59,077 nucleotides of DNA from Ramazzottius varieornatus (GCA_001949185.1 BDGG01000011.1:1352518-1411594), one strand, 5' to 3'; counted from the first letter of the stretch, positions 38,154-57,285 are shown. Notes: generated from the sequence alone by a model not told the origin. Program-made: numbers and translations.

Positions 38154-40678
38154 ATGCCGCTGGATTTTCTGAACAAGTTGGGCATTCGTCCCCCGCCGAT
38201 AAATGTACGAACGCTGCAAGGTATAGGCAAGGATCTCGGCTTCTTCAACAGCAACGCGCAGCACAAAAATCAGAACTACAACGCACTGAAGACAGCTTGT
38301 CTGCAAAGCGGCACTTTATTCGAGGACGAGCAATTCGCCTGCCATCCCCGCTCTTTATTCTACAGCAACAACCATGGTGTGCCAATCAACTCTGTCCAGT
38401 GGCTTCGACCAAAGGTATTTGCGTGATGAACGCTCATCTGCTCAATCATCGCTGACGTATTTTATCCGAACCTCTGTTTCTAACCAAGAATCAGTCATAC
38501 AAGTCCTGTTTTTTCTATCACAGGATATCAACCGTAATGCTTGCCTGGTACGAAGTGGCGGAACATCAACTGATGGCCGTGAAGGACAACTAGGACGGGA
38601 TGTTAGTCAAGGCCAGGTTGGAAACTGCTGGTTCGTAGCAGCCTGCGCCGTACTTGCTGAATTCCCAAAGCTGTGGAAACATGTAAAATCACTTCATGTC
38701 AAATTCGACATTTATTTTCTTTCGACATCTTCAGTGGCTTTCTCGCTGATCTGCGCTAGGTTATTCCTGATTTTAAAGAGCAAGAGCTGAACGAGTTCAT
38801 GGGCGCATCTGGCCGATACGGCGGTATATTCCATTTCAAGTTTTGGGTCTTTGGCGAATGGATCGACGTGGTAATTGATGATCGGCTACCGACCGTAAAT
38901 GGCCAGTTAATCTTCTGCCGCTCAAAAGCCGGCGATGAGTTTTGGAGCCCGCTGCTGGAAAAAGCCTACGCAAAGTAAGCTTCCGTCTTCAATGTCTCGA
39001 TTTTCATTGCGTCAAATTAGTTGTTATCCTGATTAGACTTCATGGGTGTTATGAAGCGTTAGACGGCGGCAATCTTACCGACGCTTTGGTTGACTTTACC
39101 GGTGGCGCAGCTGAGAGCATAGAGCTAAAAGATCATCAAAACGTGGAACTTCAGGACAATTTGTTCCGTCTGCTGGAGAGAGATCTACAGTTCAACAGTC
39201 TGATGTGTGCTGCCATTGATGTATGTTGACGATTATCTTATAGCTACCAGCTCTTGAAATTTCTCCAATACCAAAACGGTGTTTTATGCAGATTGATTCT
39301 CGGGACGAAATGGAAGCCGTACAGCAGAACGGCTTGGTGAAAGGCCACGCCTACGGTGTGACAAACCTAAAGACGATACTGAACAATGAAGTTCCCGGCC
39401 TGTTGTCCTTTCTGGGAGCCGGCAACCGTAGCGCGGTGCGCCTCATCCGGTTGAGGAACCCATGGGGACGAAAGGAATGGAACGGACGATTCAGTGATGG
39501 ATCACCCGAATGGAACCAGATCAGCCAACAAAAGCGCAAAGAGCTCGGTCTAATTTTCGAAGACGACGGCGAATTCTGGATGGCCTTTGACGACTTCTGC
39601 AAGCACTTCACCAGCGTTTCCCTCTGCCGCATCATTTACAACAGCTTGATCGGCTCCCTGTTGAGCGGAGGCGCCAAGAACTGGAGTGAGGGGGTCTTCA
39701 AGGGCGAATGGAAACAAGCGGATAAGTGTGGTGGTTGCATCAACAACCTCGGCACCTTCTTCAATAATCCCCAGTATCGCTTTGATGTGGCCAACGATGA
39801 CGAGCCGGTCATGATCAGTCTGTCACAGCCCGATAACCGCCACATGCGCTCGTCTGGAGGCGGCAATTATTTAACGATCGGGTTCTACGTGATGCGCATC
39901 GAGATCAACAGGAAGACGAGGGTGAGGATGCTGAAAGCCAAAGCCGGCTGCTCGGCTTATGGAGCCACTAGGACGAGGACCTTGCATATGACCCTGAAAC
40001 CCGGTCGCTATTGTGTCATACCGACAACGTTCGAGCCTGGTCAGGAAGGACAGTTTCTTTTGCGTGTCCTGACCAGCTATGACTGCCATCCTGGGTACGC
40101 TTGTGTTGAACTCAATACAAGAATTGTAGTGGTTGGACATTGTCTTGTAGAACGTTGGAGGTGGATCTCCCCAAACAGAAGCTGATGGGTGGACTGATGT
40201 CTGGTGGCAGCATCGACGCGCAGTACCTGATGTCCGTCACCGTTCGTCAGGCTGATGGCCTTCCCCTTAGCGCCAAAGGCTCTTTGCCTGATCCGTTCGT
40301 GGTCCTTGACTGTGAAGGAAAGACGGCCAAGACGCCGGTTGTCTTTAATTCTACTAGTCCGGTGTTCAACGAAACCGCCCTGTTTTACCGCAAGACACTG
40401 GCAGCTCCGGTAAACCTTCAGGTACAGTAAAAGCAACGATTGCCGATTTGAATCGGCCACTACCGTGTATTTATCACTACGTCTTGATTTTTTACCTGCA
40501 GGTCTTGAATCGCAACCTGATGAAGGATACACTGATTGGTCAGACTTCCATGTCTTGTAATCAAGTGACCAACGGGCGAGTTCGGCAGTTCCAGTGTCCT
40601 TTGCAAGGAAAAGATAGCGCCGCTGCCGGTGTGATTGTCATCGATGTGGCGATCTACACCGATCTGGCAGCAGTCTAG
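38154..40678 (+). CDS. CAPN5: Calpain-5 / Tra-3-type calpain (CysPc, domain III, C2)
   Basis: [20 protein letters not shown] and RLRNPWG supply the catalytic triad; GGCINN..NPQY; C-terminal C2 (PDPFVVL..SPVFNE) instead of penta-EF-hand. Confidence 0.92.
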
Positions 40679-42230
40679 ACTAGCTAAAAAATGAGAATTT
40701 AACGTCTTGGCTTGATGTTGTGTGGATTCGACGTTTTCTAGCAGAAAGGTGACGTAAAACGGATTCATCAGTAACATGACGTTGTATCCAAGTGGTAGTT
40801 ATTTTGCAGCTATTGCAAGGGAACGCGGTTTCTGACGAGGGAACCTTCAGACCATGTCACTCGCCGATCACGATAGAAATGATTTCACGTGATAGCTGAG
40901 ACTCATGGCTCTCTACAAAGTATCGGGAAGAACCGCGAATGACCATGCCCGGGCTCCACAGAAATTCTCGAATGCGTGGCAGTCGACATTGCAGAGATAG
41001 AATTGAGAGTATGAGACTGCGTACAGTAAAGGCTAATCAATCAAGTCATTCATCAATCAAGTCACAATGTATGCTAACATGACTCACATGCCTTGTCATG
41101 TCAGGTCATACATGACGATAACAATCTCTTCATCAGACTCGCCAGAATTATCAGAGCCATTTCCATCGTCAATCTCGCCATCATCAGACTGAAGAAAAGA
41201 GGAGTAATTGTAGAAACTTACGTCGAGAACATTGTCATCTTCGTCAACAGTACTCTACGCTTCTCGGCTTCCAAGTAATGATTATGAGCCATCACAACCG
41301 TTACACAGTATCAAGATGTCCAGATCAAAAACGGAGAGGCGCAAGAGAAAAGTGAAACTTTGTTATCTCATCAGCAGGATAGAAATCGACACAAGACAGA
41401 AAAAGTACTGTGAATGAGTGATCAGCCGTTTCCGGCTGCTGGCTTGAGTCAGAAAAGACCGTGACCGGGGGTTGTTTTACGCTGACTAAGAGCCAAACCC
41501 GTCCCACATCATTGGAATTTTAAAGTATTGACAGCCATAACTTCTAATAAAATTTGACTTGGTTCTTTGCGGAGCTTTCCAAGTTTCCGCCCATGGTGAT
41601 TTTTCTCGCCTCCACAATACGGCACCATAAGTTAAAACAAGTGTACATTCGGCAAAGCAAGACGAACTGTCACATGATGTTGGGATGACGCATGCGGGAG
41701 TGTCATTAATACAGTCAGGCCTTCAAGTATTCAAGTGCCGTTTCACGAACGCTCATTTCACAAGTTTCTGTCTCTGATCAAATGTAAGACTTTCATTCCC
41801 TTTTCTGTTGAACATAGCGCATAACTCCTGGTCAGCTTCACATCCGATTGATAAAGTCGTATCTGTCCGGCATAGTTTTGACAGGGAACGAATTGTTCTT
41901 CTTGAAGCAAACCGGCAGCTGAGTTTGAGTCTAAAAATGAGCCATGTCCCTCGTACTGGTTTCTTCTGCATAAATAACCGTACAGAAGGCTCCAAAAACG
42001 TTCTCTTTACAACGGAAGAACAGTCCTATGTAGAATCGGAGGGAAGGACTTTGGTTGATTAAACCGATCGGTTTGACGAATTAATATTTGTAGTAGCTCC
42101 TCTCGAGAACAAAACCGCATGTAGTGATAAACTTATCACGTCAAGTGGTGATTTGATATAGCTTCCTTCAGAGCCTACAAAGCAGCTCCTACAAAAGATG
42201 TTTGACAGTTACATACACACGACTGTACAG

Positions 42231-45200
42231 ATGTTTCTGGACAAAATCTGGGCAAAGTAATCTAGCCCAGAAATTGTTGTTGCAGCCACGAAGCTCCGCA
42301 TGACAGTACGGTTAACTATACCTTTCCTACGCATCGCCGTACATCAGGATGAAGCGTGGGAACTACAGTCTCATGGAAACGTTGGGACGAGGAGGGTACG
42401 GCGTCGTCTTCAAAGGAATACATACTGTGGTGAGCTTTCTTTCTGTGCAGTCTGACAGTCATTACGAGAGGCAGTTCATTCATCCGAGCTCGAGATGCTA
42501 ATGCGCAGTTGGTTTGTGCATGTGTTTGTCACAGCTCATTGTAAGGTATCACAGTAGTCACACACCACCCTACAAGAGCTGGTGTGAGGGGGAGGATTAG
42601 AGGCATAAACGGGAACCAGGAAGTTAAGAGGGAACATTGTTACTCGATCTTCCGTGACCACCTACCAGCACCGAGACGTGCCGGAGAGCGAGTATCGCCT
42701 CACCCCGTGAAGAGAGCAGGAGCTCTCTGATTAATCAGAGAAAGAAGCTCGGATATAATTCCACGGTGAACAGGTAGACCAAACAGAAGTACTCTCCAGG
42801 AAACGTATGAGTGCGGAAGGCGTAACAGAAAGAACAGACCAAACAGAGGGCGGATGGCGAGAAACGGCTACAGATGGCAGCACTGAAGGGAATACTATTC
42901 TGTTCTTTACACTGGGCGGAGTCGAGCCATCACGTGAATCAATTAAAGCTTTGTGTTTCCTTGCCGCGGCAAAGCCTTGTGAGAAGATTCCCATAAAGCT
43001 GATATCATTTTAACCGTTCGAGCAATCAATGCTGTGGAACTACGCAGAATTTATGGACTCTGACAGTACCAACATGGTTTGAACGCGTTTCTACATCGGT
43101 TCCAAAAAGAAAACGGTTGGTAATGGGGATCACGTTTGTCGGACTCTTTGGTCGTTTGTCTTGACCGTAAATTTTTTTGTAGAGTGCCAGTTAGCCCGAA
43201 CTTGATACAGAAACATTTCTCAAGGTCGTTATAGTTCGCTGGTACTGCGCGGGCAATAGGGTGAAGATGTGTAGAAATCGAAGTATCAACGTACCCGCAG
43301 AAACCGTAGACGTTGTCCAGTCTTTTGCTTTCCACTGGACTTTCCTTGCAGATAGAGTTTTGGTGATAACGACCTGCTGTAGCAAAGGGGACCTGTATTA
43401 GCGGCGGCGCACAGAGCTAGATTTGTCTGGGAATGTGCACAAAATGCATCCTCAAAGTAGCCACGTGACGTCGCTTCCCGATGAGCCATTGTCACCTGAT
43501 CTCTTGCTTGGCTGTGTTTGTACGCTGCACAGATGTTGAGCAATCGAGAGAACTAAACACAGACGCCAGCACTTTCAGCCGAGACCAGCAAACTTTGCCT
43601 ACGTGGGGACGACGTTGAGTTAGCCGCCTATGTTTGCCTGTTTTTTTGAAACTTACTCTCGAACACCATTGCATGGATGGGTGGACGAATAACGGGCTAT
43701 CGAATAATACGACTTGCGACTGGTAGCAGTGTCAGAAAATTCAAAAGATTGTCAAAACAGGAGGCGTCCGGATTCCATATTCAAGTGCCTAGACTCCTGA
43801 TTGATTAACCAAACAAGCAATGCACGCAGCACACCGCAGGAGTGGCTAACGGAACGAACGTTTCCTCGTACCTACTTTGCCAGGATTGGGGAGACAAGCT
43901 CCACCAAGTGGATTAACTGTATTTGTTCGTAGACTGGGCAAACAGTTGCTATTAAAGAGATTTTCCGTCTTCACATCGCTGGTGTTGGAGCAGACCGGGG
44001 ACTGTCGGTTGAGCGTGAAATCGAAATTTTGAAGGTAAGCGAATGCTCGTCGTGCAGCAGTGAAAACAGTTCCACGTCTGTCTTAGAGAAGGCTGCACAG
44101 CACAATTTTTGTGCAGGTAAACTTTTCCAAGTGACATCAGCCTGCCAGGACCACAGCGCTCTTGGGTGCGATACAGTAAAAAAATATACGGTCCTGCTGG
44201 TGATCGCGTAACTGAATATCTCAATCAATGACAAAAGTGTCATTTACTTAATGATCACCGGCAGTGCAGTACTTTCTTCATTGTAATGTTTGTAGATGGG
44301 GACTGTGTGAAGCACCCAAGGGTACCTATCCGTTCTGAGGGTGAATACAATGTTGTCACCAGGCAAGTTTGGGTTACACAATGACCGTACTGTCCAGGCG
44401 CCCCTGTCTTGTCCTCGTCCAAGGTCTACGCCTATCCGGTCCCGTCGAAGTGAGATAAGGAGATGCCACAAACCGAAAGCTTTCGCCTCTTTGTAGAAAC
44501 TTCAGTCCATACGACATAGAAACTTGGTGCTGCTGCTGGATGTACTTGAATCAACGGTAAGCGTGACTTCGGGCAGATTAAAAACACTGCAACGAACATT
44601 TTCTCCATTACGCAAAGGCACCGTGAATCCTAGGGGTCCGAACAGTGCACGCACGAAGGGAAAGTTTGGAACAGTAAAAAGTTTGGAGCGGGCAGAAAAG
44701 ACGACGAAATCAGAATTTGACCGTAGAAAGTTGTCAAAAAGTGCATTGGCGCGATTTGCACATGTACGTACGAACTTCCGTTCCGCTGTTTCGAAAGCGC
44801 CTGTTCCAAACTTTCCCTTTGTACGTGTAGCCTCACTGTGATTTCTTAATTGCCTGAAATGCATAACAAATTGATCGCACTGACAAGGAAAAAGAAACCA
44901 ATGAATATTAGCTTGCTTGTTAAAAGAAAAAAACAGCTTGCGAACCGGGGTTTCGTACCTATTGAATCCGCTAAAGGAAGACTAACGGTGACTTGGTACG
45001 GTCGATACGAGCAACGGCTGACCGACAGTAAATTTGAGTGTTTGTGCGTGGTGGAGCTCTCCAATCGAGACCAGTTTAGGGTCCCATCATAGTCCTGGGA
45101 TTTGATGGGAGCGAAAAGTAGCTTACATTCGAAGGCGCATGGAAACGCAAAGTCGGCTCACCCATGAGCCCATTAAACGCGAGTCTGTTTCTGCTGTATA

Positions 45201-48200
45201 ATCTTCCATTTCTGTGCGGATGTCGAAAAAATGGCAACCAGCCCAATCAGCCATGCCGCTGTGCAATAGTGAATGTGTTAAAAAATTAGTGCTTGTATGT
45301 TATACCCGGCATGTGACCACCGGCCTGTAATCGGGTCGGCTAACTCGAATGAACCTGGTCCCACCTACGGATCGGCCCCATGGGTGCAACGTACGTACAC
45401 GGCCAACGCATCGGCTCAAACCGTGACGTCACGTTCAACATTGCCATTTCCCAGCTGTTTTACAAATTAGAATTTTCCAGCGGCTTGGATGAGCCCAATA
45501 TCACGACCAGAAACTTACACTTTAGTTGAACAGAACAGATAGGGCTTATCAGGGAGGTGTAAGCAGTATGGCCTCTCAAAACGGGGCGGTGTAGTGGATG
45601 CGGTCGGACACGTATACACTGGCTCCCATAAGTGATTGGCCACCCTATACCACATTCAAAAATTCATAACTTCCTTCGTTATGGACCGATTTTAACATTT
45701 CAAAGTTGGCTAAGAACACTAATGTTTTATCTTCACGACTACATGACTTTCCTGACAACCCATGGATAAATCAACTGGCAGTGCTCGACCTACAAACCTT
45801 GAAAAAACCTTGTTTTAGGCGCCGTGCTGAGGTTGCCAGCCAACAGCTGGCGCAATCCGGTTGTCACCGCGAGGTAGAAACAATATCGGTCTTTCAAACA
45901 AGCCTACGTGCGAATTTCTCCGAGCTCTGTGGAAGGAGGTCCGCTAAAATGCCGATTTGGGTTTTCTCGCGGCGTAAAACAAACTGTTTTACCTTTAACC
46001 TTCAATATCTTCCGTTAACGTTAAGGCTCATTGAAAGACCTGAACAATAACGCTGAGTCGTCTTAGTTTAAGTGGCAACCATTCAGACGTATCTTAGGGG
46101 CGAAGATATCGGAGATAAGGCGTACGGAATATTCCCTGGCGAAGACAACCAAGACTACTTCCTGGTGGGCATGTTAGCGAAACTTCCTCTACAGAGCTGG
46201 GAGAAATTCGCACTTCGGTACGCTGCCGAAAATAGGGTGGTTCTGAAGGTTTATACGCCGAGCACTGCCAGCTGATTTATAGATGAGCTCCCACAAAAGT
46301 CACGTGGTCGTGAAAGTAAAACGATACTCTTCTCAGTCATCTTTGAATTATCAAAATCGGTTCACAACGAAGGAAGTTATGATTTTTCGAATGATTGTAT
46401 AGGGTGGTCAAGCACTTATGAGAGACCGTTTAGTTTCTGTCGGACGAGCAACCCATACGAGAGACTGCGCTAGTTTATCAGGACCGCTGGTTTGATCTTG
46501 TGCTGTGTTCCTTATTTGCACAGGACAAAAACCGCTCGGATAAGCTTATCCTCTGCCTGGAATACTGCAATGCCGGAAGCTACACGGATTACTTGTCGAG
46601 TACGACGTATTGACGCCACGTTTTTACAAAGAACTTCCTGTACTGTCCCCCGCTCGAATGTGTGGTCAAAAACACGGTCTCAGTTTTGCCATAGCAAGAC
46701 GTTATGCCAATCCCGCTTGGCATGGTCTGGCCAGCGGTCCACTTTTAAATTGATTACCAGATTGGCCAGTTCGAAGCCCATGTAATACTCGTATTACATG
46801 GGCTTTTCAAGTGTGTCACGAGCTCAGTGGACGAGGAACATGACGAAGCTTTCAGATATCGCAAACACGCTGATGAAAAACGACGCTCTAGTTCATCCGG
46901 GTACGCGGTAATTTTCATCCGCAATCGTAGCGTTACACATTCCATTTTAGCGCTCCGTGGACACGAGTCACCTGAAGATATGACTGACCACAAACTGACC
47001 ACCCATTCTGAGCGCGGGTACTGTGCCGTCAAAGAGTTTGCTTGCAGAAGTGAAAATTGTCAGCGAGGTCAAACTGCACGGATTTGCCATCCAGCTAAGT
47101 GAAGGTCTGAAGGTTCTGCATGATCTTTCAATCGTCCACAGAGACCTAAAGCCAGCCAACATTCTCATGCACAACGAGAATGCGAGTCAGGATCCGCAAA
47201 AGCCAGACAAGCTGATCTTGAAGATAGCGGATTTTGGTTTGGCCAAAATCATCAACAAGGATCTCGCAACCAACAGTAATCAAGTGGGCACCGATAGATA
47301 CATGGCTCCCGAAGTTGCCACAGCTCACAGGGCCCGCTATAATGGAAAAGCGGACCTCTGGAGCCTGGGTGTAATACTGTACGAGAGCATAACGGGAAAA
47401 CTGGACTACGTAGATACCGTAAGTCTTGTGAAACCTGCATTCTCGAAGTGTTGCTTTCATCTTTCCCTGTCTGCGTAAAAAACTGCATGGAAAGTGAGGT
47501 TCTGTCACGCGTTAGAGCCCGTTTAGCGGGCCAAGTTACCTGACTTGGCCGGTCCCTTTCCCTAAGGCTGCGAGGGAAGACAACTAACTAAACAGTACTT
47601 CCCCTCCACTTCCGCAAAATCAAGCTGATGGAAAGTACTGTCTACAATGCCACCCTAGCAGCAAAGAGACTTCACTTTGCAAGTACTGCATTCTCTCGAT
47701 GGTTCTTCGTGATCACGCGACATGTCGTAAATGGCGGGGACAGAAAATATCTTTGCCTTCGATCAAAAATTTACTCGCCAGTCCAGTGTAGTGGTGGGCG
47801 ACAATCAAACAGTCAGTGATATCAGTGTGGGTGTAATTTACTGCCATGATGACGTGCTTCGCAGGTCCATCGAGGGAAAACACTCGGTGTGCTATGGCAA
47901 GCAAAGGTAGCCGCATAAACATCCACGCTTTCCTCCAAAATTCATGCCCTCTGGTCGTCCACTTTGCTGCATCAGATAAATTTTATTTTGCGCTTTTCTG
48001 AAAAGATCTGATGTAGCCTGAAAGGACATTCATTTCTCATAGTACCGAGTGATGAAGTAATTGAGAAAAGGCCAGAGTGGAATTTACAGAGCGTTAGGAG
48101 CCAGAACGCGAAAGTATCGGCCGAGGATGGTTACGACGCTCATCGTAAAACAATCGTTTTTCCCTTTTTACATAAGGTTTTTCGAGACGGCTGATTTGGC

Positions 48201-50374
48201 TCGAACGCTCGATCATCCGTCTACCGAGTGGATGTTGAATGTGTGAGAAGATGGGGAATGGGAATTTTCAGGAGCCCTGTACGCTCGAGCTTCCGCTTAG
48301 CGCCGAACCGTCGTGCAGTACTTCCCATAAGACTGCCTCCGACACTCTCGATTCTCGCGATATCACAGAAGTAGATGCTGTGTTACAGTATAGTGGTAGG
48401 ACATGGATAGAAAAGCGGTGAGACAAGGTTAGGACTAAAGCTAGAGCGACAGAAGGAGGCAGTCGATCGCCGAGCCAGCGTCAACCGTAAAAAGGGTCCA
48501 ACTGGGACAACACCTATTGACTGAGGAAATGCTCATGACAGTTCGACAGGAGAAATAGAATTCGCTCGTAACATGCCGCAGATGGTGAGCGAAGTTCCAG
48601 TCTCCAAAAGTGTAGACGTTATGAGGACTACACAAGGCAGAAAATTTCGCAGGCTCTGAATTCTGACGGGTGGCATGTATACCTGGTCGGAAAGATGGAA
48701 GTACAGTAATACAATTAATAAATGTCTGGTGGTATTTACAACATTATTTAATTCGTAGCCGTTTCAGGATGTACCGGAATTTCCGCACGCTGCTGTTTTG
48801 GCGCTTTGCTCAAAAGTGGAAAGATCGGTTCAACACTTAACAATGCAGGTTTCGCGCGATCTTCAAGACCTCCTCGAGAATTTGTTGAGAGTGAGTCCGC
48901 TGGCCCGTATGGATTTCGAAGGATTTTATGACCATGCTTTCTTGCGGTTCCACATTGTACGCGAACGTGAGACCGTATCGTCTATCGCAAGCCAGTACGG
49001 TATGAGCACAGAGTGGCTTTGCCAAATGAACGACGCTATCGTCAACTGCTACAAACCGGTCAAAGGAGCTAAAATCTGCGTCCGGAGAAGCCAGTCCTGC
49101 ACCGCGACCAAACCGGGCCAAAAGAACGTGTGTGGTATCAATATCGGAGAAAAACATTGGATAGTTTCACAGTTCGATGGAGCGCAGTTTACTCAGGCTT
49201 CCCAAAAGAAGGCGCCTCTAGTGACAACTGTGCTCAGTAGTTTACAGAATCAGCTCGCTAAGGCCGGAGCATCGGCCGCAGGCTGTGCACCGCACGTGAT
49301 AGCTTATGACCTTGCACGCCTGGTTGGAAAACGTTTCAGACCACATCAACACGGAAGACCAACGATCGGGAAGTTCTCAAAAAATGGCGAACCGTCATTC
49401 AACGTGACGGCCGTAGTCCTGCCATCTGTCTATTCAATGCGACAGGAACTAGACAAGTCACTCCAGAGAGCTATTGTGGCGAGATATTGACGACGCTCAG
49501 ATCAAACGTCGAGGATTCGTTTGCATCTAACAGTGACCTACAAACGGTCATCGGGGTTCCCAGTCACTTTGATTTCGCACAAATGCTCAGAATATCCAAA
49601 ACTGCTAAGCTAGCAGGATGGAATGTGACCGGAGTTGTCGAAACACCCCTGGCGCTCGTTCTGGCTTACGATGTTTACAGGCATGAAGCCCTGACAGGAA
49701 ACGTTCTGGTGTGTGAGATAGGGGAGACGGAGATCAACTTTTCGGTTCTGCGCTACCGTGGCCCTTATACCTATGAAATTTTGGTGGCTGCACTTCAGCT
49801 TGGAATTGGACTGTCGTATCTAGACGAAGCGGTCGCCAAAGACGTTATTACGGAAGCAAAACGCGTTTTTGGCCAGAAGATCCAAAAGAACAGCGATGTT
49901 CTAAACACTTTGCGCACGGAAGCGCTGCAAGCTCGGCGCCGTCTGCATCATCCGTCTGCGGAAAGTATTGCCAACGAAAAAATTTATGAGGTTATTTACG
50001 CGAAGAATTGTTTCGAAGAAATGTCCTTCAAAACACGGCTGACGGTACCGATGGTGGAAGATTTGTATCAGCCTTTCTATGCTGCCATCACAGAGATAAC
50101 CGAGCAGCTGACGCAGAGTCTGAAGCAAGGCAACCATTCGACAGAAATAAGTCACATCATACTGGCCGGAGGCTGTCGTTCAGTCCCAAACATCCGCCAG
50201 TTATTGTTGAAGCCTTTTCCTCAAGCCACTATCCACGACAGGTTGGATCCAAGCGAATGCGCTGCGCATGGAGCTTCGTTTTACGCGCATCTCCTCGCTG
50301 TCCATCACTTCAAGCCACCGAAAAATGCGCTGTGCGAGTTCCCTCTCAGAGCTGTGTCAAACCATTTTGATTGA
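42231..50374 (+). CDS. ULK/Atg1-like Ser/Thr kinase - LysM - degenerate Hsp70 NBD fusion; exons (42231-42256), 42348-42429, 43933-44034, 44497-44556, 46524-46599, 47048-47418, 48768-50374 with one apparent frameshift near 49335
   Basis: Phase-consistent exons: LGRGGYGVVFKG | VAIKE..EREIEILK | HRNLVLL | LEYCNAGS | HRDLKPANIL..DFG..APE..ADLWSLG | DLLENLL..RMDFEGFYDHAFL. Then HIVRERETVSSIASQYGMSTEWLCQMN (LysM). Then CGINIG, RLVGKRF, VIGVPSHF, AKLAGWNV, ILAGGCRSVP, AAHGA (Hsp70 fold). The first exon is tentative. Confidence 0.85.
43050..43400 (-). mobile_element. Possible decayed LTR-retrotransposon gag fragment in a kinase intron
   Basis: Fragments LYLQGK / KAKDW and PANYNDLEKCFCIKFG resemble gag motifs across frameshifts; weak. 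Confidence 0.25.
44643..44830. mobile_element. CACTA-like MITE in a kinase intron
   Basis: TIRs cacgcacgaagggaaagtttggaacag and ctgttccaaactttccctttgtacgtg; second copy at 50579-50769. Confidence 0.7.
45617..46430. mobile_element. Non-autonomous Tc1-like element in a kinase intron
   Basis: About 95-bp imperfect TIRs: TA|CACTGGCTCCCATAAGTGATTGGCCACCCTATAC... and ...GTATAGGGTGGTCAAGCACTTATGAGAGACC. Confidence 0.7.
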
Positions 50375-50578
50375 CGACTCGCCAAAATTTCCTTCATTTC
50401 TTGCAATAGATTGTCCGTCTTTTTTACCGTTCGAGACAGCTACTTCATCCAGCTATGGTGCTACGACAGTTTTTTTATCGGCATGATCAGCGACATGAAT
50501 TCCCTCATCCTGTCATAATATGTCTCATTGTTTCGTACTTTCATCCGTCGAGGTCGCCTTAGTCTCAGTTTCTCATCA

Positions 50579-50872: not shown

Positions 50873-52078
50873 CTACCGCTTACTTGACTGTGGGAATAGT
50901 TTCAACTCTATAGTAGATGGCTGCGTTCTATTATTGTGCGACCCATGTACGAAGGTCAGATCCTCCTCAGCGACCAACTTTTCGTTCTGTTCCAACTGCA
51001 GCTTCAAGGCGTCTTCCTTGAAACTAATCATATCCATCAAGTCCTGCGTCTTCTGTTCCAGCCTTTCTTTTGTCGTTCTCAACGAAGTATGCAGCAAGTT
51101 CGCCCAATTCTGTCTGTCCAGTCCATACTTGCCGGCAATGTTTCCGCTGTTGATCAACATGGCGAGCGAATGTTGTCGCACATCCTCATATCCCTGCACT
51201 TGAAAGACTGTATCCCTCATCCGCAGTAAATCGTCCTCCGCTTCACCCATATACTTTATAAAGTCATCAATCAACTGCGCTATGGCTTCTTCGCTGTATT
51301 CTGCCGGCACCGGCATGTTGACTTTCGCCTGTAAACTGGAGACATGAGCTGCATTGTACTTTTGCCGTAGTAACTGATTGCCCGTATTCTCCGCTTGTTT
51401 CTCCTTCAAACTATCTTCCAACCTCTCGACCAACTCCTCGTAGTTCCTGTTCTGAACATCCAAGTCTTGTATTCTACGTTCAGCACTGGCCAACTGTTCT
51501 TCTCCACACATGTAGTCGCTCATCAGTTTGCACCATTCACTTTCGTTCTTCTCCAATGCTTCGTAAAGTTGATCATCTTCTTCCATACCTTCCATGACCA
51601 GTTCTTCCATATGGTCGATCATCTTGCCCTTGATCAACCATTGATCCCGCAATGTATCCTTCATGGTCTCTTTACCGCGCATTAAGAACAACTTACAATT
51701 AAAACCAGGAACGTTACAAACATTATCCCGCAACAGTTCGAGCCGGTTAGCTGTACGTTCTTTGCGACGTTGCCATTTCAATTGCTGCTTCTGCAGGGTC
51801 TTGTTGATACGAGTGAGCTGGTGCTCGTTCTTCTGCAGGTAATTTAGATCACGACGAACAGCGTCAGCTTTAAACTCCAACAATTTCTTCAGCTTCTCCA
51901 AAGCAGCGACAGTCATATGCGGAAGTAAATCTTCCGCTTCCTTGATGTTCTCTGAGGAAAACTTGATAGTGGGGAAATGGGAGGCGGAAAAGTCCCGTTC
52001 ATCCTCCCCTACAACGCTCTCAGTATCTGTCATCATGTACTCATCCTTACTCTGTTCTCGAGGTCTGGCCATTGTCAA
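50873..52078 (-). CDS. Intronless 401-aa coiled-coil protein of unknown family
   Basis: Long uninterrupted ORF, E/L/K/Q-rich with heptad-like pattern; no recognised motif. Confidence 0.7.
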   Translation of the reverse strand: MTMARPREQSKDEYMMTDTESVVGEDERDFSASHFPTIKFSSENIKEAEDLLPHMTVAALEKLKKLLEFKADAVRRDLNYLQKNEHQLTRINKTLQKQQLKWQRRKERTANRLELLRDNVCNVPGFNCKLFLMRGKETMKDTLRDQWLIKGKMIDHMEELVMEGMEEDDQLYEALEKNESEWCKLMSDYMCGEEQLASAERRIQDLDVQNRNYEELVERLEDSLKEKQAENTGNQLLRQKYNAAHVSSLQAKVNMPVPAEYSEEAIAQLIDDFIKYMGEAEDDLLRMRDTVFQVQGYEDVRQHSLAMLINSGNIAGKYGLDRQNWANLLHTSLRTTKERLEQKTQDLMDMISFKEDALKLQLEQNEKLVAEEDLTFVHGSHNNRTQPSTIELKLFPQSSKR

Positions 52079-56233: not shown

Positions 56234-57285
56234 TCAGAAATACAGATCTTTTGTCAGCATGGACACTACGCTGGGCACCTGCTTCTTAGCATTCAAATCC
56301 GTTCTGTTAGCGCACGACTCGAAATTATAGGCCACGTCATAACTGACACGTGTCAACAGACGTTGAAAATCCACTTCTCGTTCATCGTCCCGGTTTGAAC
56401 CCGATGGAAACTTCATATCCCGCAACTTCCTGGTAAACGCTTCGACAAACCACGAACCGCGAGATGCATTGCGCCAGGAGTAATAACCAGGAACTGTGGA
56501 GTAGGCATAGAGGAAATCAGCTTCGGCTGGAATCCGCTGTGCGGAAGAATCGTCGCTCTCGACCGAACCAGGAAACAGCACGCCGTTCTCCAGCTTGTCC
56601 CCGCGGCAAGCTTGGATCAGGAAAACCTTGGGTTTGCCGATCAGAGAAGGGTGAATATATTTCTTGAACGGTAAGAGTAACTCATCTAGGCTTGTCTTCC
56701 CATCACGTCTAAAACACAAGAATATTTTCATCGATTTCTAACTTTGGTGAAACAGTTTTCTTCCGGAATTTACCCGTAGATGACTCCGTCGTTTCCGTGG
56801 CTCAAGATGGCGCAAATGAAACAGTCCATGGCGTTGTAATTGATCTCCGCCGCGTAGTATTCCATCGCTTTTCGCATGTTTCTAACAGTCAAGTCGTCGT
56901 ATCGGTGGATATTGCTTGTTTCAAAGCCGAGTAACCTAAACGAGTCTTGGAGGTTTGCAGCATCGACTTGAGTTCCTGTCCGCTGTGACATCCCCAGAGC
57001 AGGTTCGAAGGTCTCGTTGTTGATTATAACAGCCATACCGCGGCTATCGTGCCCCATGAAGTATCGAAGATGAACGTCTGGTGTCGACAACAGTAAGGAA
57101 TCACGTGGATAATGTGGCTGGTTAGGTTGAAGGGTATCAAGAGGATGCGCAGTCACTTGGGTTGACGAGCTGATCATCTGAAGTATGCTTCTTCTGGACT
57201 GTCCCATCGGAGGTCCTGCATCCGAGGACGTCGAGTTGGATTTCCTGACTCTTCTTTGCACGTTAGCGCTTTTGGGCTCGACCAT
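56234..57285 (-). CDS. Effector-type caspase (caspase-3/7-like), one intron at about 56710-56772
   Basis: RGMAVIINN; RTGTQVDA; ILSHG; KPKVFLIQACRG; IPAEADFLYAYSTVPGYYSWRN; GSWF; KQVP..SMLTKDLYF; no CARD or DED prodomain. Confidence 0.95.

What the first reader, a model, noticed from the sequence alone, without database searches (positions are those of the whole stretch)
42231..50374. Kinase-LysM-Hsp70 fusion: candidate cytosolic glycan sensor built on an autophagy-type kinase
Seen: six phase-consistent exons scattered over 8 kb of transposon-filled introns rebuild a complete kinase with intact GxGxxG, VAIK, HRDLKPAN, DFG and APE motifs. The last exon runs in frame from the kinase end into a LysM module (about 48948-49082) and then an Hsp70-like NBD. 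No signal peptide or TM segment is visible. Known: LEYCNAG, ADLWS.G and RMDF..F..H.FL are typical of ULK1/Atg1 kinases; LysM binds GlcNAc polymers (peptidoglycan, chitin); the LysM kinases I know are plant surface receptors. Inference: this is an intracellular sensor coupling microbial glycan detection to phosphorylation or xenophagy. I do not know this three-domain architecture as a described family.
Basis: partly seen in the sequence, partly recalled or inferred. Interest (0 to 1): 0.88.

Follow-up and report, generated by a model that had tools for sequence, protein, structure and literature searches.

The report
Broken tardigrade kinase-LysM-Hsp70 fusion gene
A tardigrade gene really does string an autophagy-type (ULK-like) kinase, a sugar-polymer-binding LysM module and a degenerate Hsp70 ATPase domain into one transcript, an arrangement found nowhere else, but a one-base frameshift and an unspliced intron mean the complete three-domain protein is probably not made.

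Summary
The parts are real. Six GT..AG, phase-compatible exons encode a kinase with all catalytic motifs, nearest to ULK1/ULK2. The last exon runs straight from the kinase end into a LysM (Pfam above cut-off; modelled beta-alpha-alpha-beta fold) and, 13 residues later, an Hsp70-like nucleotide-binding domain. No signal peptide or membrane segment is present. Transcript contigs from three studies confirm the 47418->48768 junction.

- The Hsp70 domain switches frame (-1) at an A6 run (49379-49384). RNA contigs from three studies match the genome there, so the shift is real. The upstream frame stops at 49488-49490.
- Intron 4 (46600-47047) has an atypical donor and is retained in the only transcript contig that covers it, which brings in a stop.

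The Hsp70 domain has also lost its catalytic residues and has no substrate-binding domain. The locus is annotated in Ramazzottius varieornatus as fragments (RvY_15200, 324 aa; a second 263-aa model). No orthologue or similar architecture turned up in 1.84 billion representative proteins.

A paralogous ULK-like kinase appears fused to a GH19 chitinase-like domain; the scan's note s1-794837, on another piece of this genome, describes a kinase-GH19 fusion, probably this gene. That makes kinases that capture glycan modules the more interesting lead.

Verdict: a novel but interrupted lineage-specific fusion. The sensor function is unproven.

The parts
42349..42429 (+). Exon 1: start codon and glycine-rich loop of the kinase; no signal peptide
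   Evidence: weak Pkinase match to profile positions 1-20
43933..44034 (+). Exon 2: VAIK lysine and alpha-C glutamate
   Evidence: E2->E3 junction shown by the loose end of X1 record 1
44497..44556 (+). Exon 3
   Evidence: junction 44556->46524 in an X1 contig
46524..46599 (+). Exon 4 (LEYCNAG hinge region); ends in phase 1
46600..47047 (+). Intron 4, with atypical donor CGA|GTACGA. It is retained in the transcript contig, where reading through hits a stop at 46611-46613
   Evidence: X1 record 1 runs 46523-46967 and record 4 starts at 46939, with no 46599->47048 joint in any of four runs; donor comparison and read-through
47048..47418 (+). Exon 5: catalytic loop, DFG, APE; ULK1/2-like
   Evidence: Pkinase 109 bits; ULK1 1.8e-22
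48768..50374 (+). Exon 6: kinase C-lobe end, LysM, Hsp70-like NBD and stop codon; collinear with the genome in RNA contigs
   Evidence: junction 47418->48768 in X1, X5, X6; X1 record 4 covers 48768-50400 with no gaps
48951..49082 (+). LysM domain
   Evidence: Pfam 23.3 bits against cut-off 20.9; 26.4 bits; AF2 pLDDT 91.6 with a beta-alpha-alpha-beta fold; all top PDB fold matches are LysM at TM about 0.8
49122..49385 (+). N-terminal part of the Hsp70-like NBD in the kinase/LysM frame. The phosphate-1 loop and the catalytic lysine are replaced
   Evidence: alignment A1 with the genome's own Hsp70s
49379..49385 (+). A_AAA_AAT: the place where homology switches to the -1 frame (A6 run 49379-49384)
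   Evidence: no indel in contigs of three studies
49392..49410 (+). 7-bp hairpin starting 6 nt after the heptamer; not stronger than shuffled controls
   Evidence: z-scores -1.24 and -0.44
49488..49490 (+). TGA that ends the upstream (kinase-LysM) frame 35 codons after the shift
49385..50371 (+). Rest of the NBD in the -1 frame, open for 329 codons (Hsp70 profile positions 83-376; no substrate-binding domain)
   Evidence: HSP70 95 bits; HSPA1B/HSPA8 NBD residues 85-383 at 1.8e-22; Atlas Hsp70 NBD-only clusters at 0.96
44645..44815 (.). About 170-bp interspersed repeat with inverted ends in intron 3
   Evidence: 76 matches in the genome
47684..47883 (.). About 200-bp interspersed repeat in intron 5
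   Evidence: 40 matches, a lower bound

Best explanation
This is a lineage-restricted chimeric gene of the tardigrade Ramazzottius varieornatus (annotated piecemeal as RvY_15200 plus a 263-aa model). A divergent paralogue of the ULK/Atg1 kinases acquired a single LysM and an Hsp70-derived pseudo-ATPase NBD in its last exon. The 765-codon three-domain frame is interrupted twice in the mRNA. Intron 4 is retained and brings an in-frame stop. A -1 frameshift at an A6 run lies inside the NBD.

Standard decoding therefore gives at most a 470-residue kinase-LysM protein with a truncated NBD, and only if intron 4 is removed. If it is not removed, the products are fragments. The downstream frame is still open for 329 codons and all kinase motifs are intact, so the lesions look recent. 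This is a newly disabled or truncated gene rather than an old pseudogene.

The inferred function of the intact form is a soluble cytosolic Ser/Thr kinase. The LysM would tether or regulate it through GlcNAc-containing polymers (chitin or peptidoglycan fragments), and the catalytically dead NBD would serve as a protein-interaction or regulatory module.

Shown: domain content, splicing of three of the five junctions, the frameshift in RNA, intron 4 retention, and the lack of orthologues. Inferred: glycan binding, kinase activity, and the recency of the lesions.
For: - Domains.
- Junctions, and identity of RNA contigs with the genome at the A6 run in three studies.
- Frame switch.
- Intron 4 retained in a contig that is otherwise spliced, with an atypical donor.
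- Catalytic residues of the NBD replaced (phosphate-1 loop, Lys71 equivalent, Glu175 equivalent, phosphate-2 loop).
- Public gene models stop and start at the lesions. P0002 is RvY_15200 of R. varieornatus, which begins at the Met at 47167 and ends at 49487. P0001 covers only the downstream frame.
- An exhaustive HMMER search of 1.84 billion representatives found no full-length relative, only LysM-repeat proteins and one ULK-like kinase. None of the 98 hits has an NBD.
- The real ULK1 orthologue lies elsewhere in the genome.
- Paralogous ULK-like kinases carry other C-terminal modules, one of them GH19-like.
Against: - Intron retention rests on contigs of one study. Contigs drop rare isoforms, so a properly spliced minority mRNA cannot be excluded.
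- All RNA and DNA probably come from one clonal laboratory strain, so the lesions could be strain-specific.
- The 329-codon open downstream frame and the intact kinase motifs are also what one expects if the whole protein is still made, for example by ribosomal frameshifting.
- No selection test was possible because there are no orthologues.
Confidence: 0.62

Rival explanations
1. The full 765-residue kinase-LysM-NBD protein is made by programmed -1 ribosomal frameshifting at A_AAA_AAT (49379-49385), helped by the hairpin that starts 6 nt downstream. On this reading the gene is an intact cytosolic glycan-sensing kinase.
For: - The heptamer fits the X_XXY_YYZ pattern in the correct register, and the required shift is -1.
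- Hsp70 homology resumes exactly there, at the conserved Trp.
- A 7-bp hairpin begins after a 6-nt spacer.
- The downstream frame is open for 329 codons.
Against: - A one-base contraction of an A7 run gives the same picture, and one register in three would fit by chance.
- The downstream fold is no stronger than shuffles (z -1.24 and -0.44).
- Programmed -1 frameshifting is very rare in animal cellular genes (general knowledge).
- Intron 4 retention independently breaks the frame.
- There are no relatives in which to test conservation of the site.
Confidence: 0.09
2. The locus works as separate products, as annotated: an N-lobe-less kinase fragment with LysM (RvY_15200) and an independent 263-residue NBD fragment, each with its own function.
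For: Public gene models P0002 (324 aa) and P0001 (263 aa) exist. The transcript contig with retained intron 4 would favour such open frames.
Against: - P0002 starts inside the catalytic loop region, after HRDLKPAN. It lacks the ATP-binding lobe, so it cannot be a kinase.
- P0001 starts in the middle of the NBD fold.
- One contig covers both without a break (X1 record 4), so P0001 would need internal initiation.
- These models look like by-products of automatic annotation around the lesions.
Confidence: 0.1
3. The frameshift is an assembly error and the gene is intact.
For: Homopolymer runs are error-prone in assemblies.
Against: Contigs of three independent RNA studies cover 49379-49385 with no inserted or missing letters. 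These are X1 record 4, X5 record 13 and X6 record 18.
Confidence: 0.02

Closest known systems
ULK1/ULK2 (Atg1) kinases
   Same: The kinase domain is nearest to ULK1/ULK2 among all solved structures (83 and 73 bits against 62 for the next kinase). The C-lobe end resembles the ULK tail (hit P0073).
   Different: - It is not the orthologue. The genome's true ULK1/2 gene scores 190 bits to ULK1.
- No part scanned matched a MIT/ATG13-binding domain. The C-terminus is LysM plus an Hsp70 NBD.
- A tree of own-genome kinases did not resolve its position.
Plant LysM receptor kinases (CERK1, NFR1/5, LYKs)
   Same: Both combine LysM with a Ser/Thr kinase in one polypeptide. LysM folds from CERK1 and CEBiP ectodomains are among the structural matches.
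   Different: Plant receptors have a signal peptide, three extracellular LysMs, a membrane helix and an RLK/Pelle-type kinase at the C-terminus. Here there is one LysM, C-terminal to a ULK-like kinase, with no membrane segment, so both would sit in the cytosol.
Hsp70 family nucleotide-binding domains, including NBD-only Hsp70-like proteins
   Same: The actin-like NBD aligns over HSPA1B/HSPA8 residues 85-383. The Atlas's nearest clusters are short Hsp70 NBD proteins (score 0.96).
   Different: - The catalytic Asp10, Lys71, Glu175, Asp199 and Thr204 equivalents are replaced.
- There is no substrate-binding domain.
- It is fused to a kinase and a LysM.
- It is split by a frameshift.
GH19-LysM chitinase/lysozyme-like proteins of the same genome, and fern/algal chitinase-A LysM modules
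   Same: The genome holds a GH19 plus four-LysM gene and a GH19 plus LysM gene, which are a plausible source pool for glycan modules. The modelled LysM superposes on Pteris, Equisetum and Volvox chitinase LysMs.
   Different: - The LysM here is closest (38-41% identity) to a different single-LysM gene that looks secreted, at C2:2151109.
- It has no hydrolase domain beside it.
- It is attached to a cytosolic kinase.

Membership tests
Protein kinase (Pkinase, PF00069) | Glycine loop, VAIK lysine, alpha-C Glu, HRD..N catalytic loop, DFG, APE | tested here: met
   All are seen in exon translations. Pkinase scores 109 bits on exon 5. Continuity of the N-lobe and C-lobe depends on splicing of intron 4, which was not observed.
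ULK/Atg1 family | Kinase domain closest to ULK1/2 | tested here: met
   ULK1 1.8e-22 and ULK2 1.7e-19 lead the PDB list.
ULK/Atg1 family | Orthology to ULK1/Atg1 | tested here: not met
   Another locus (L011, G000:C7:1348xxx) scores 190 bits to ULK1 against 83 here. The tree is unresolved except for L011 grouping with a foreign ULK.
ULK/Atg1 family | C-terminal tandem MIT (EAT) domain that binds ATG13 | tested here: not met
   Pfam on both pieces of exon 6 gives only LysM and HSP70.
LysM (PF01476 / CBM50) | HMM match above the curated cut-off | tested here: met
   23.3 bits against 20.9; 26.4 bits; LysM-repeat proteins down to 1e-17 in the exhaustive search.
LysM (PF01476 / CBM50) | Beta-alpha-alpha-beta fold | tested here: met
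   AF2 pLDDT 91.6 with elements E-H-H-E. Top Foldseek hits are all LysM at TM about 0.8 and rmsd 1.3 A. Caveats: the alignment used was made of LysM domains, and the Foldseek E-values are only about 6e-3 for so short a domain.
LysM (PF01476 / CBM50) | Binding of GlcNAc polymers | not testable with these tools
   Needs a chitin or peptidoglycan pull-down.
Plant-type LysM receptor kinase | Signal peptide, extracellular LysM triplet, membrane helix, C-terminal RLK/Pelle kinase | tested here: not met
   There is a single LysM after the kinase. The maximum 19-residue hydropathy is 1.49. The kinase is ULK-like.
Hsp70 (PF00012) | Nucleotide-binding domain homology | tested here: met
   95 bits over profile positions 83-376. 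The N-terminal 82 positions are recognisable only by alignment.
Hsp70 (PF00012) | Catalytic residues for ATP hydrolysis | tested here: not met
   The DLGTT loop reads NIGEK. The Lys71 equivalent is Ala. The Glu175 equivalent is Thr. The DLGGGT loop reads EIGETE.
Hsp70 (PF00012) | Substrate-binding domain and lid | tested here: not met
   The match ends at profile position 376 of 599, and the stop codon follows at 50372-50374.
Programmed -1 ribosomal frameshift site | Slippery X_XXY_YYZ heptamer in the zero frame | tested here: met
   A_AAA_AAT at 49379-49385 in register.
Programmed -1 ribosomal frameshift site | Stable stimulatory structure 5-9 nt downstream | tested here: inconclusive
   A 7-bp hairpin follows a 6-nt spacer, but z-scores are -1.24 and -0.44 against shuffles.
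Programmed -1 ribosomal frameshift site | Conservation of the site, and trans-frame protein | not testable with these tools
   No orthologues were found, and no proteomic or ribosome-profiling data are on hand.

The most novel reading that the evidence does not exclude
Tardigrades, which lack the intracellular Toll components, most of the Imd pathway and NF-kB (PMC7056985), may have built their own class of cytosolic pattern-recognition kinases. They would have done so by fusing duplicated ULK-like kinases to glycan-recognition modules: LysM (plus a pseudo-Hsp70 scaffold) at this locus and a GH19 chitinase-like domain at G000:C7:230306-231572. The gene studied here would be one member, either recently disabled in the laboratory strain or kept whole by -1 frameshifting.
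Probability: 0.18. Interest if true: 0.8.

Novelty: new variant of a known kind. Interest (0 to 1): 0.5.

Why it matters
If the intact form works as its domains suggest, it would be the first animal kinase that carries its own LysM. It would be a soluble counterpart of the plant chitin and Nod-factor receptors. Together with the kinase-GH19 paralogue, it would point to an unexplored route of microbe or cuticle-fragment sensing in an animal phylum whose immune signalling is known to be non-canonical.

As it stands, it is mainly a clean example of a young chimeric gene caught at birth or at death. It is transcribed, its domains are intact, and its reading frame is broken. It also shows that the current annotation of this locus (RvY_15200 and its neighbour) consists of fragments of one gene.

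Tried and rejected
- **Assembly error at the A6 run:** rejected, because RNA contigs of three studies agree with the genome.
- **A small hidden intron that would restore the frame:** rejected, because contigs are collinear from 48768 to 50400.
- **Single-sequence AF2 of the 240-residue piece of exon 6:** failed at pLDDT 32, so nothing was learned from it.
- **Kinase tree against own-genome kinases:** unresolved, with a 121-column alignment and no starred branches.
- **Word-based homologue searches with the NBD piece and with RvY_15200:** these found only the gene itself and generic or ULK-like kinases. The length window (0.55-1.75 times the query) means a full-length fused relative of about 765 aa could not have been seen by these two searches. 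The exhaustive search has no such limit and also found none.
- **P0101, the best non-self hit:** a ULK-like kinase with a C-terminal membrane anchor, not a LysM protein.
- **Pfam scan of all 98 LysM hits:** It was replaced by a local phmmer run, in which one hit had a kinase domain and none had an NBD.
- **Literature searches:** searches for the architecture, for GH19 or LysM in tardigrades, and for the locus tags found nothing specific.
- **Joined protein:** the spliced protein was never joined or searched as one sequence. All searches were exon by exon, by reference.
Full report
**1. What is there**

Translation of 42200-50500 in three frames, with inspection of the borders, gives six + strand exons with GT..AG introns and compatible phases:
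- E1 42349-42429: ATG and glycine loop
- E2 43933-44034: VAIK and alpha-C Glu
- E3 44497-44556
- E4 46524-46599: ends in phase 1
- E5 47048-47418: HRDLKPAN, DFG, APE
- E6 48768-50374

Pfam, run exon by exon and by reference, gives these matches:
- Pkinase at 109 bits on E5, with weak matches on E1 and E4
- LysM at 23.3 bits (cut-off 20.9) at 48951-49082
- HSP70 at 95 bits on 49379-50371

The joined protein was never built or searched.

No 19-residue window reaches a membrane-helix hydropathy (maximum 1.49), and E1 starts directly with the kinase. A soluble cytosolic protein is therefore the default prediction.

**2. Transcript evidence**

Runs with small, transcriptome-like contig sets hold about 0.58 of the words of 46900-50400. 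That share fits exons only. Contigs of four runs were laid on 44450-50400:
- The joint 47418->48768 (GT..AG) is present in X1, X5 and X6, which come from three studies.
- The joint 44556->46524 is present in X1.
- The same X1 contig (record 1) continues 5' into letters that are the end of E2, so E2->E3 is also spliced.
- That same contig reads from E4 straight through the predicted donor at 46599/46600 to 46967. Record 4 starts at 46939 and passes the predicted acceptor at 47047/47048.
- No run shows a 46599->47048 joint.

Intron 4 is thus retained in the only data that cover it. Reading through meets a stop after four codons. Its donor, CGA|GTACGA, departs from the GT[AG]AG[CT] of the other four introns. 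X5 and X6 do not cover E4 at all, so they say nothing about this intron. Contigs drop minor isoforms, so a spliced minority form cannot be excluded.

**3. The frameshift**

The kinase/LysM frame runs on into the first ~88 residues of an Hsp70-type NBD, from 49122. It then stops at TGA 49488-49490. The rest of the NBD lies in the -1 frame, which is open from 49310 to 50371.

HMMER alignment to HSPA1B starts exactly at the two lysines and the conserved Trp, at 49379-49387, and runs to NBD residue 383. The switch therefore lies at the A6 run 49379-49384.

Contigs from three studies cross the run with no inserted or missing letters. The shift exists in the RNA and is neither an assembly error nor a hidden intron.

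Product sizes follow from the coordinates:
- E1-E5 are 230 codons.
- E6 to the TGA adds 240 codons, giving 470 residues.
- A -1 shift would give 765 residues.

**4. Could the shift be programmed?**

In favour:
- The run reads A_AAA_AAT in the register required for -1 slippage.
- A 7-bp hairpin starts 6 nt downstream.

Against:
- The folding energy of the downstream 60 and 100 nt is ordinary (z -1.24 and -0.44).
- A one-base contraction of an A7 run gives the same picture.
- One register in three would fit by chance.
- Intron 4 breaks the frame independently.

I put programmed frameshifting at about 9%.

**5. State of the domains**

*Kinase.* All catalytic motifs are present. The nearest solved kinases are ULK1 (83 bits) and ULK2 (73 bits), clear of the rest (62 bits or less).

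*LysM.* It aligns without gaps to eleven LysM domains of the same genome. With that alignment, AF2 gives pLDDT 91.6 and a beta-alpha-alpha-beta fold. Every top PDB match is a LysM, at TM about 0.8 and rmsd 1.3 A. Two caveats apply: the alignment itself consisted of LysM domains, and the Foldseek E-values are only about 6e-3 for so short a domain.

*NBD.* It derives from cytosolic Hsp70. HSPA1/HSPA8 lead the PDB list, and the Atlas finds Hsp70 NBD-only clusters at 0.96. The catalytic equivalents are replaced:

| Canonical Hsp70 | Here |
|---|---|
| DLGTT loop | NIGEK |
| Lys71 | Ala |
| Glu175 | Thr |
| DLGGGT loop | EIGETE |

The GG..P adenosine motif survives. There is no substrate-binding domain. 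This agrees with the scan's note s1-815450, and I checked that claim here.

**6. Organism, annotation, relatives**

The 324-aa public model identical to part of the locus is named hypothetical protein RvY_15200 of Ramazzottius varieornatus. The assembly has 55.84 Mb in 200 contigs, which matches the published 55.8 Mbp in 199 scaffolds (PMC5492148).

RvY_15200 starts at the Met at 47167, after the HRD motif. It uses the 47418->48768 junction and ends at the TGA. A second model of 263 aa covers only the downstream frame. The annotation therefore holds fragments cut at the two lesions.

An exhaustive HMMER search used the 243-residue piece that spans the kinase end, the LysM and the NBD start. 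It covered 1.84 billion representatives and found the gene itself, LysM-repeat proteins and one ULK-like kinase. Of the 98 foreign hits, one has a kinase domain and none has an NBD. Atlas clusters with this architecture do not exist among large clusters. Word-based searches found no orthologue either, but they are blind to proteins longer than 1.75 times the query. No paper mentions the locus or the architecture. Without orthologues, dN/dS could not be computed.

**7. The wider family in the same genome**

- The true ULK1/2 orthologue is at G000:C7:~1348000 (190 bits to ULK1).
- Divergent ULK-like paralogues lie at C7:230306, C11:975105, C1:1056788 and C1:284563. The C7 paralogue has the same exon layout in its N-lobe.
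- In the C7 paralogue, the kinase exon ends at C7:230882. A 124-nt GT..AG intron in the matching phase leads into an open frame with a GH19 chitinase-like domain. That domain scores 23.2 bits (just under the cut-off of 25.5) and is 32% identical to a GH19 of the same genome.
- The scan's note s1-794837, on another piece of this genome, describes a Ser/Thr kinase-GH19 fusion and is probably this gene. I have no RNA evidence for its junction.
- The genome has 16 LysM and 5 GH19 matches, including a GH19 plus four-LysM gene and a GH19 plus LysM gene on C6.
- LysM is reported as expanded in tardigrades (bioRxiv 10.1101/122309).
- The LysM studied here is closest (38-41% identity) to a single-LysM gene at C2:2151109 with a hydrophobic N-terminus. 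It therefore comes from the animal's own repertoire rather than from a recent transfer.
- The tree of the kinase pieces is unresolved, so monophyly of the ULK-like paralogues is not shown.

**8. Reading**

It fails on 'in frame' and on a demonstrated 'complete kinase'.

The best explanation (0.62) is a young, lineage-specific fusion gene that is transcribed but interrupted. The intact kinase motifs and the 329-codon open downstream frame argue that the lesions are recent. A neutral frame of that length would stay open by chance with a probability of about 1e-7 at about 4.7% stop codons (inference from the sequence).

The glycan-sensor idea rests on domain logic, now strengthened by a paralogue with a second kind of glycan module. 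It also gains interest from the known absence of intracellular Toll components, most of Imd and NF-kB in tardigrades (PMC7056985). No link to autophagy is shown: the gene is not the Atg1 orthologue, and no part scanned matched an ATG13-binding domain.

**9. Surroundings**

The introns carry many short dispersed repeats:
- Intron 1: two elements within 42583-43074
- Intron 3: an about 170-bp element at 44645-44815, and an about 820-bp element with about 220-bp inverted ends at about 45613-46432
- Intron 5: an about 200-bp element at 47684-47883

'Transposon-filled' is therefore fair for introns 1, 3 and 5. Neighbouring genes are ordinary animal genes: calpain, S28 carboxypeptidase, a C2-domain protein, a caspase, and a 401-residue coiled-coil-looking frame on the - strand just downstream, which has no Pfam match.

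Noticed in passing
L010:1444-2767 (G000:C7:230249-231572): A paralogous ULK-like kinase whose last kinase exon joins a GH19 chitinase-like domain through a 124-nt, phase-compatible GT..AG intron. The domain scores 23.2 bits (cut-off 25.5) and is 32% identical to a GH19 of the same genome. The scan's note s1-794837 probably describes the same gene.
   Followed up: partly
L012:787-3361 (G000:C11:974391-976965, - strand): A third ULK-like kinase (best PDB hit ULK1, 71 bits) with a C-terminal region of about 160 residues that matches no Pfam family.
   Followed up: partly
L037/L026 (G000:C6:744381-745793, - strand) and L039/L025 (G000:C6:1079959-1080528): Two genes combine a GH19 domain with LysM repeats (four and one). 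GH19 is unusual in animals. These genes are a possible source of the glycan modules seen on the kinases.
   Followed up: no
window 44645-44815; 47684-47883; about 45613-46432; 42583-43074: Several families of short interspersed repeats, some with inverted ends, lie in the introns. Each has tens of copies across the genome. Two of them show high depth in RNA contig sets.
   Followed up: partly
window 50873-52078 (- strand): A 401-residue open frame rich in Glu, Lys and Leu (coiled-coil-like) lies tail to tail with the gene and has no Pfam match.
   Followed up: no
window 56234-57285 (- strand) and 39286-40185 (+): A caspase (two exons, Peptidase_C14) and a calpain (Peptidase_C2 plus Calpain_III) flank the locus.
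   Followed up: no
P0101 (Logan contig, organism unknown): The closest foreign relative of the kinase C-lobe (38% identity) is a 355-residue ULK-like kinase that ends in a hydrophobic tail-anchor-like segment.
   Followed up: partly
runs X7, X8, X12 (organisms B, C, D; study P4): Runs labelled as other organisms hold pieces identical to this locus, introns included. This suggests that DNA or RNA of the same tardigrade is present in those samples.
   Followed up: no
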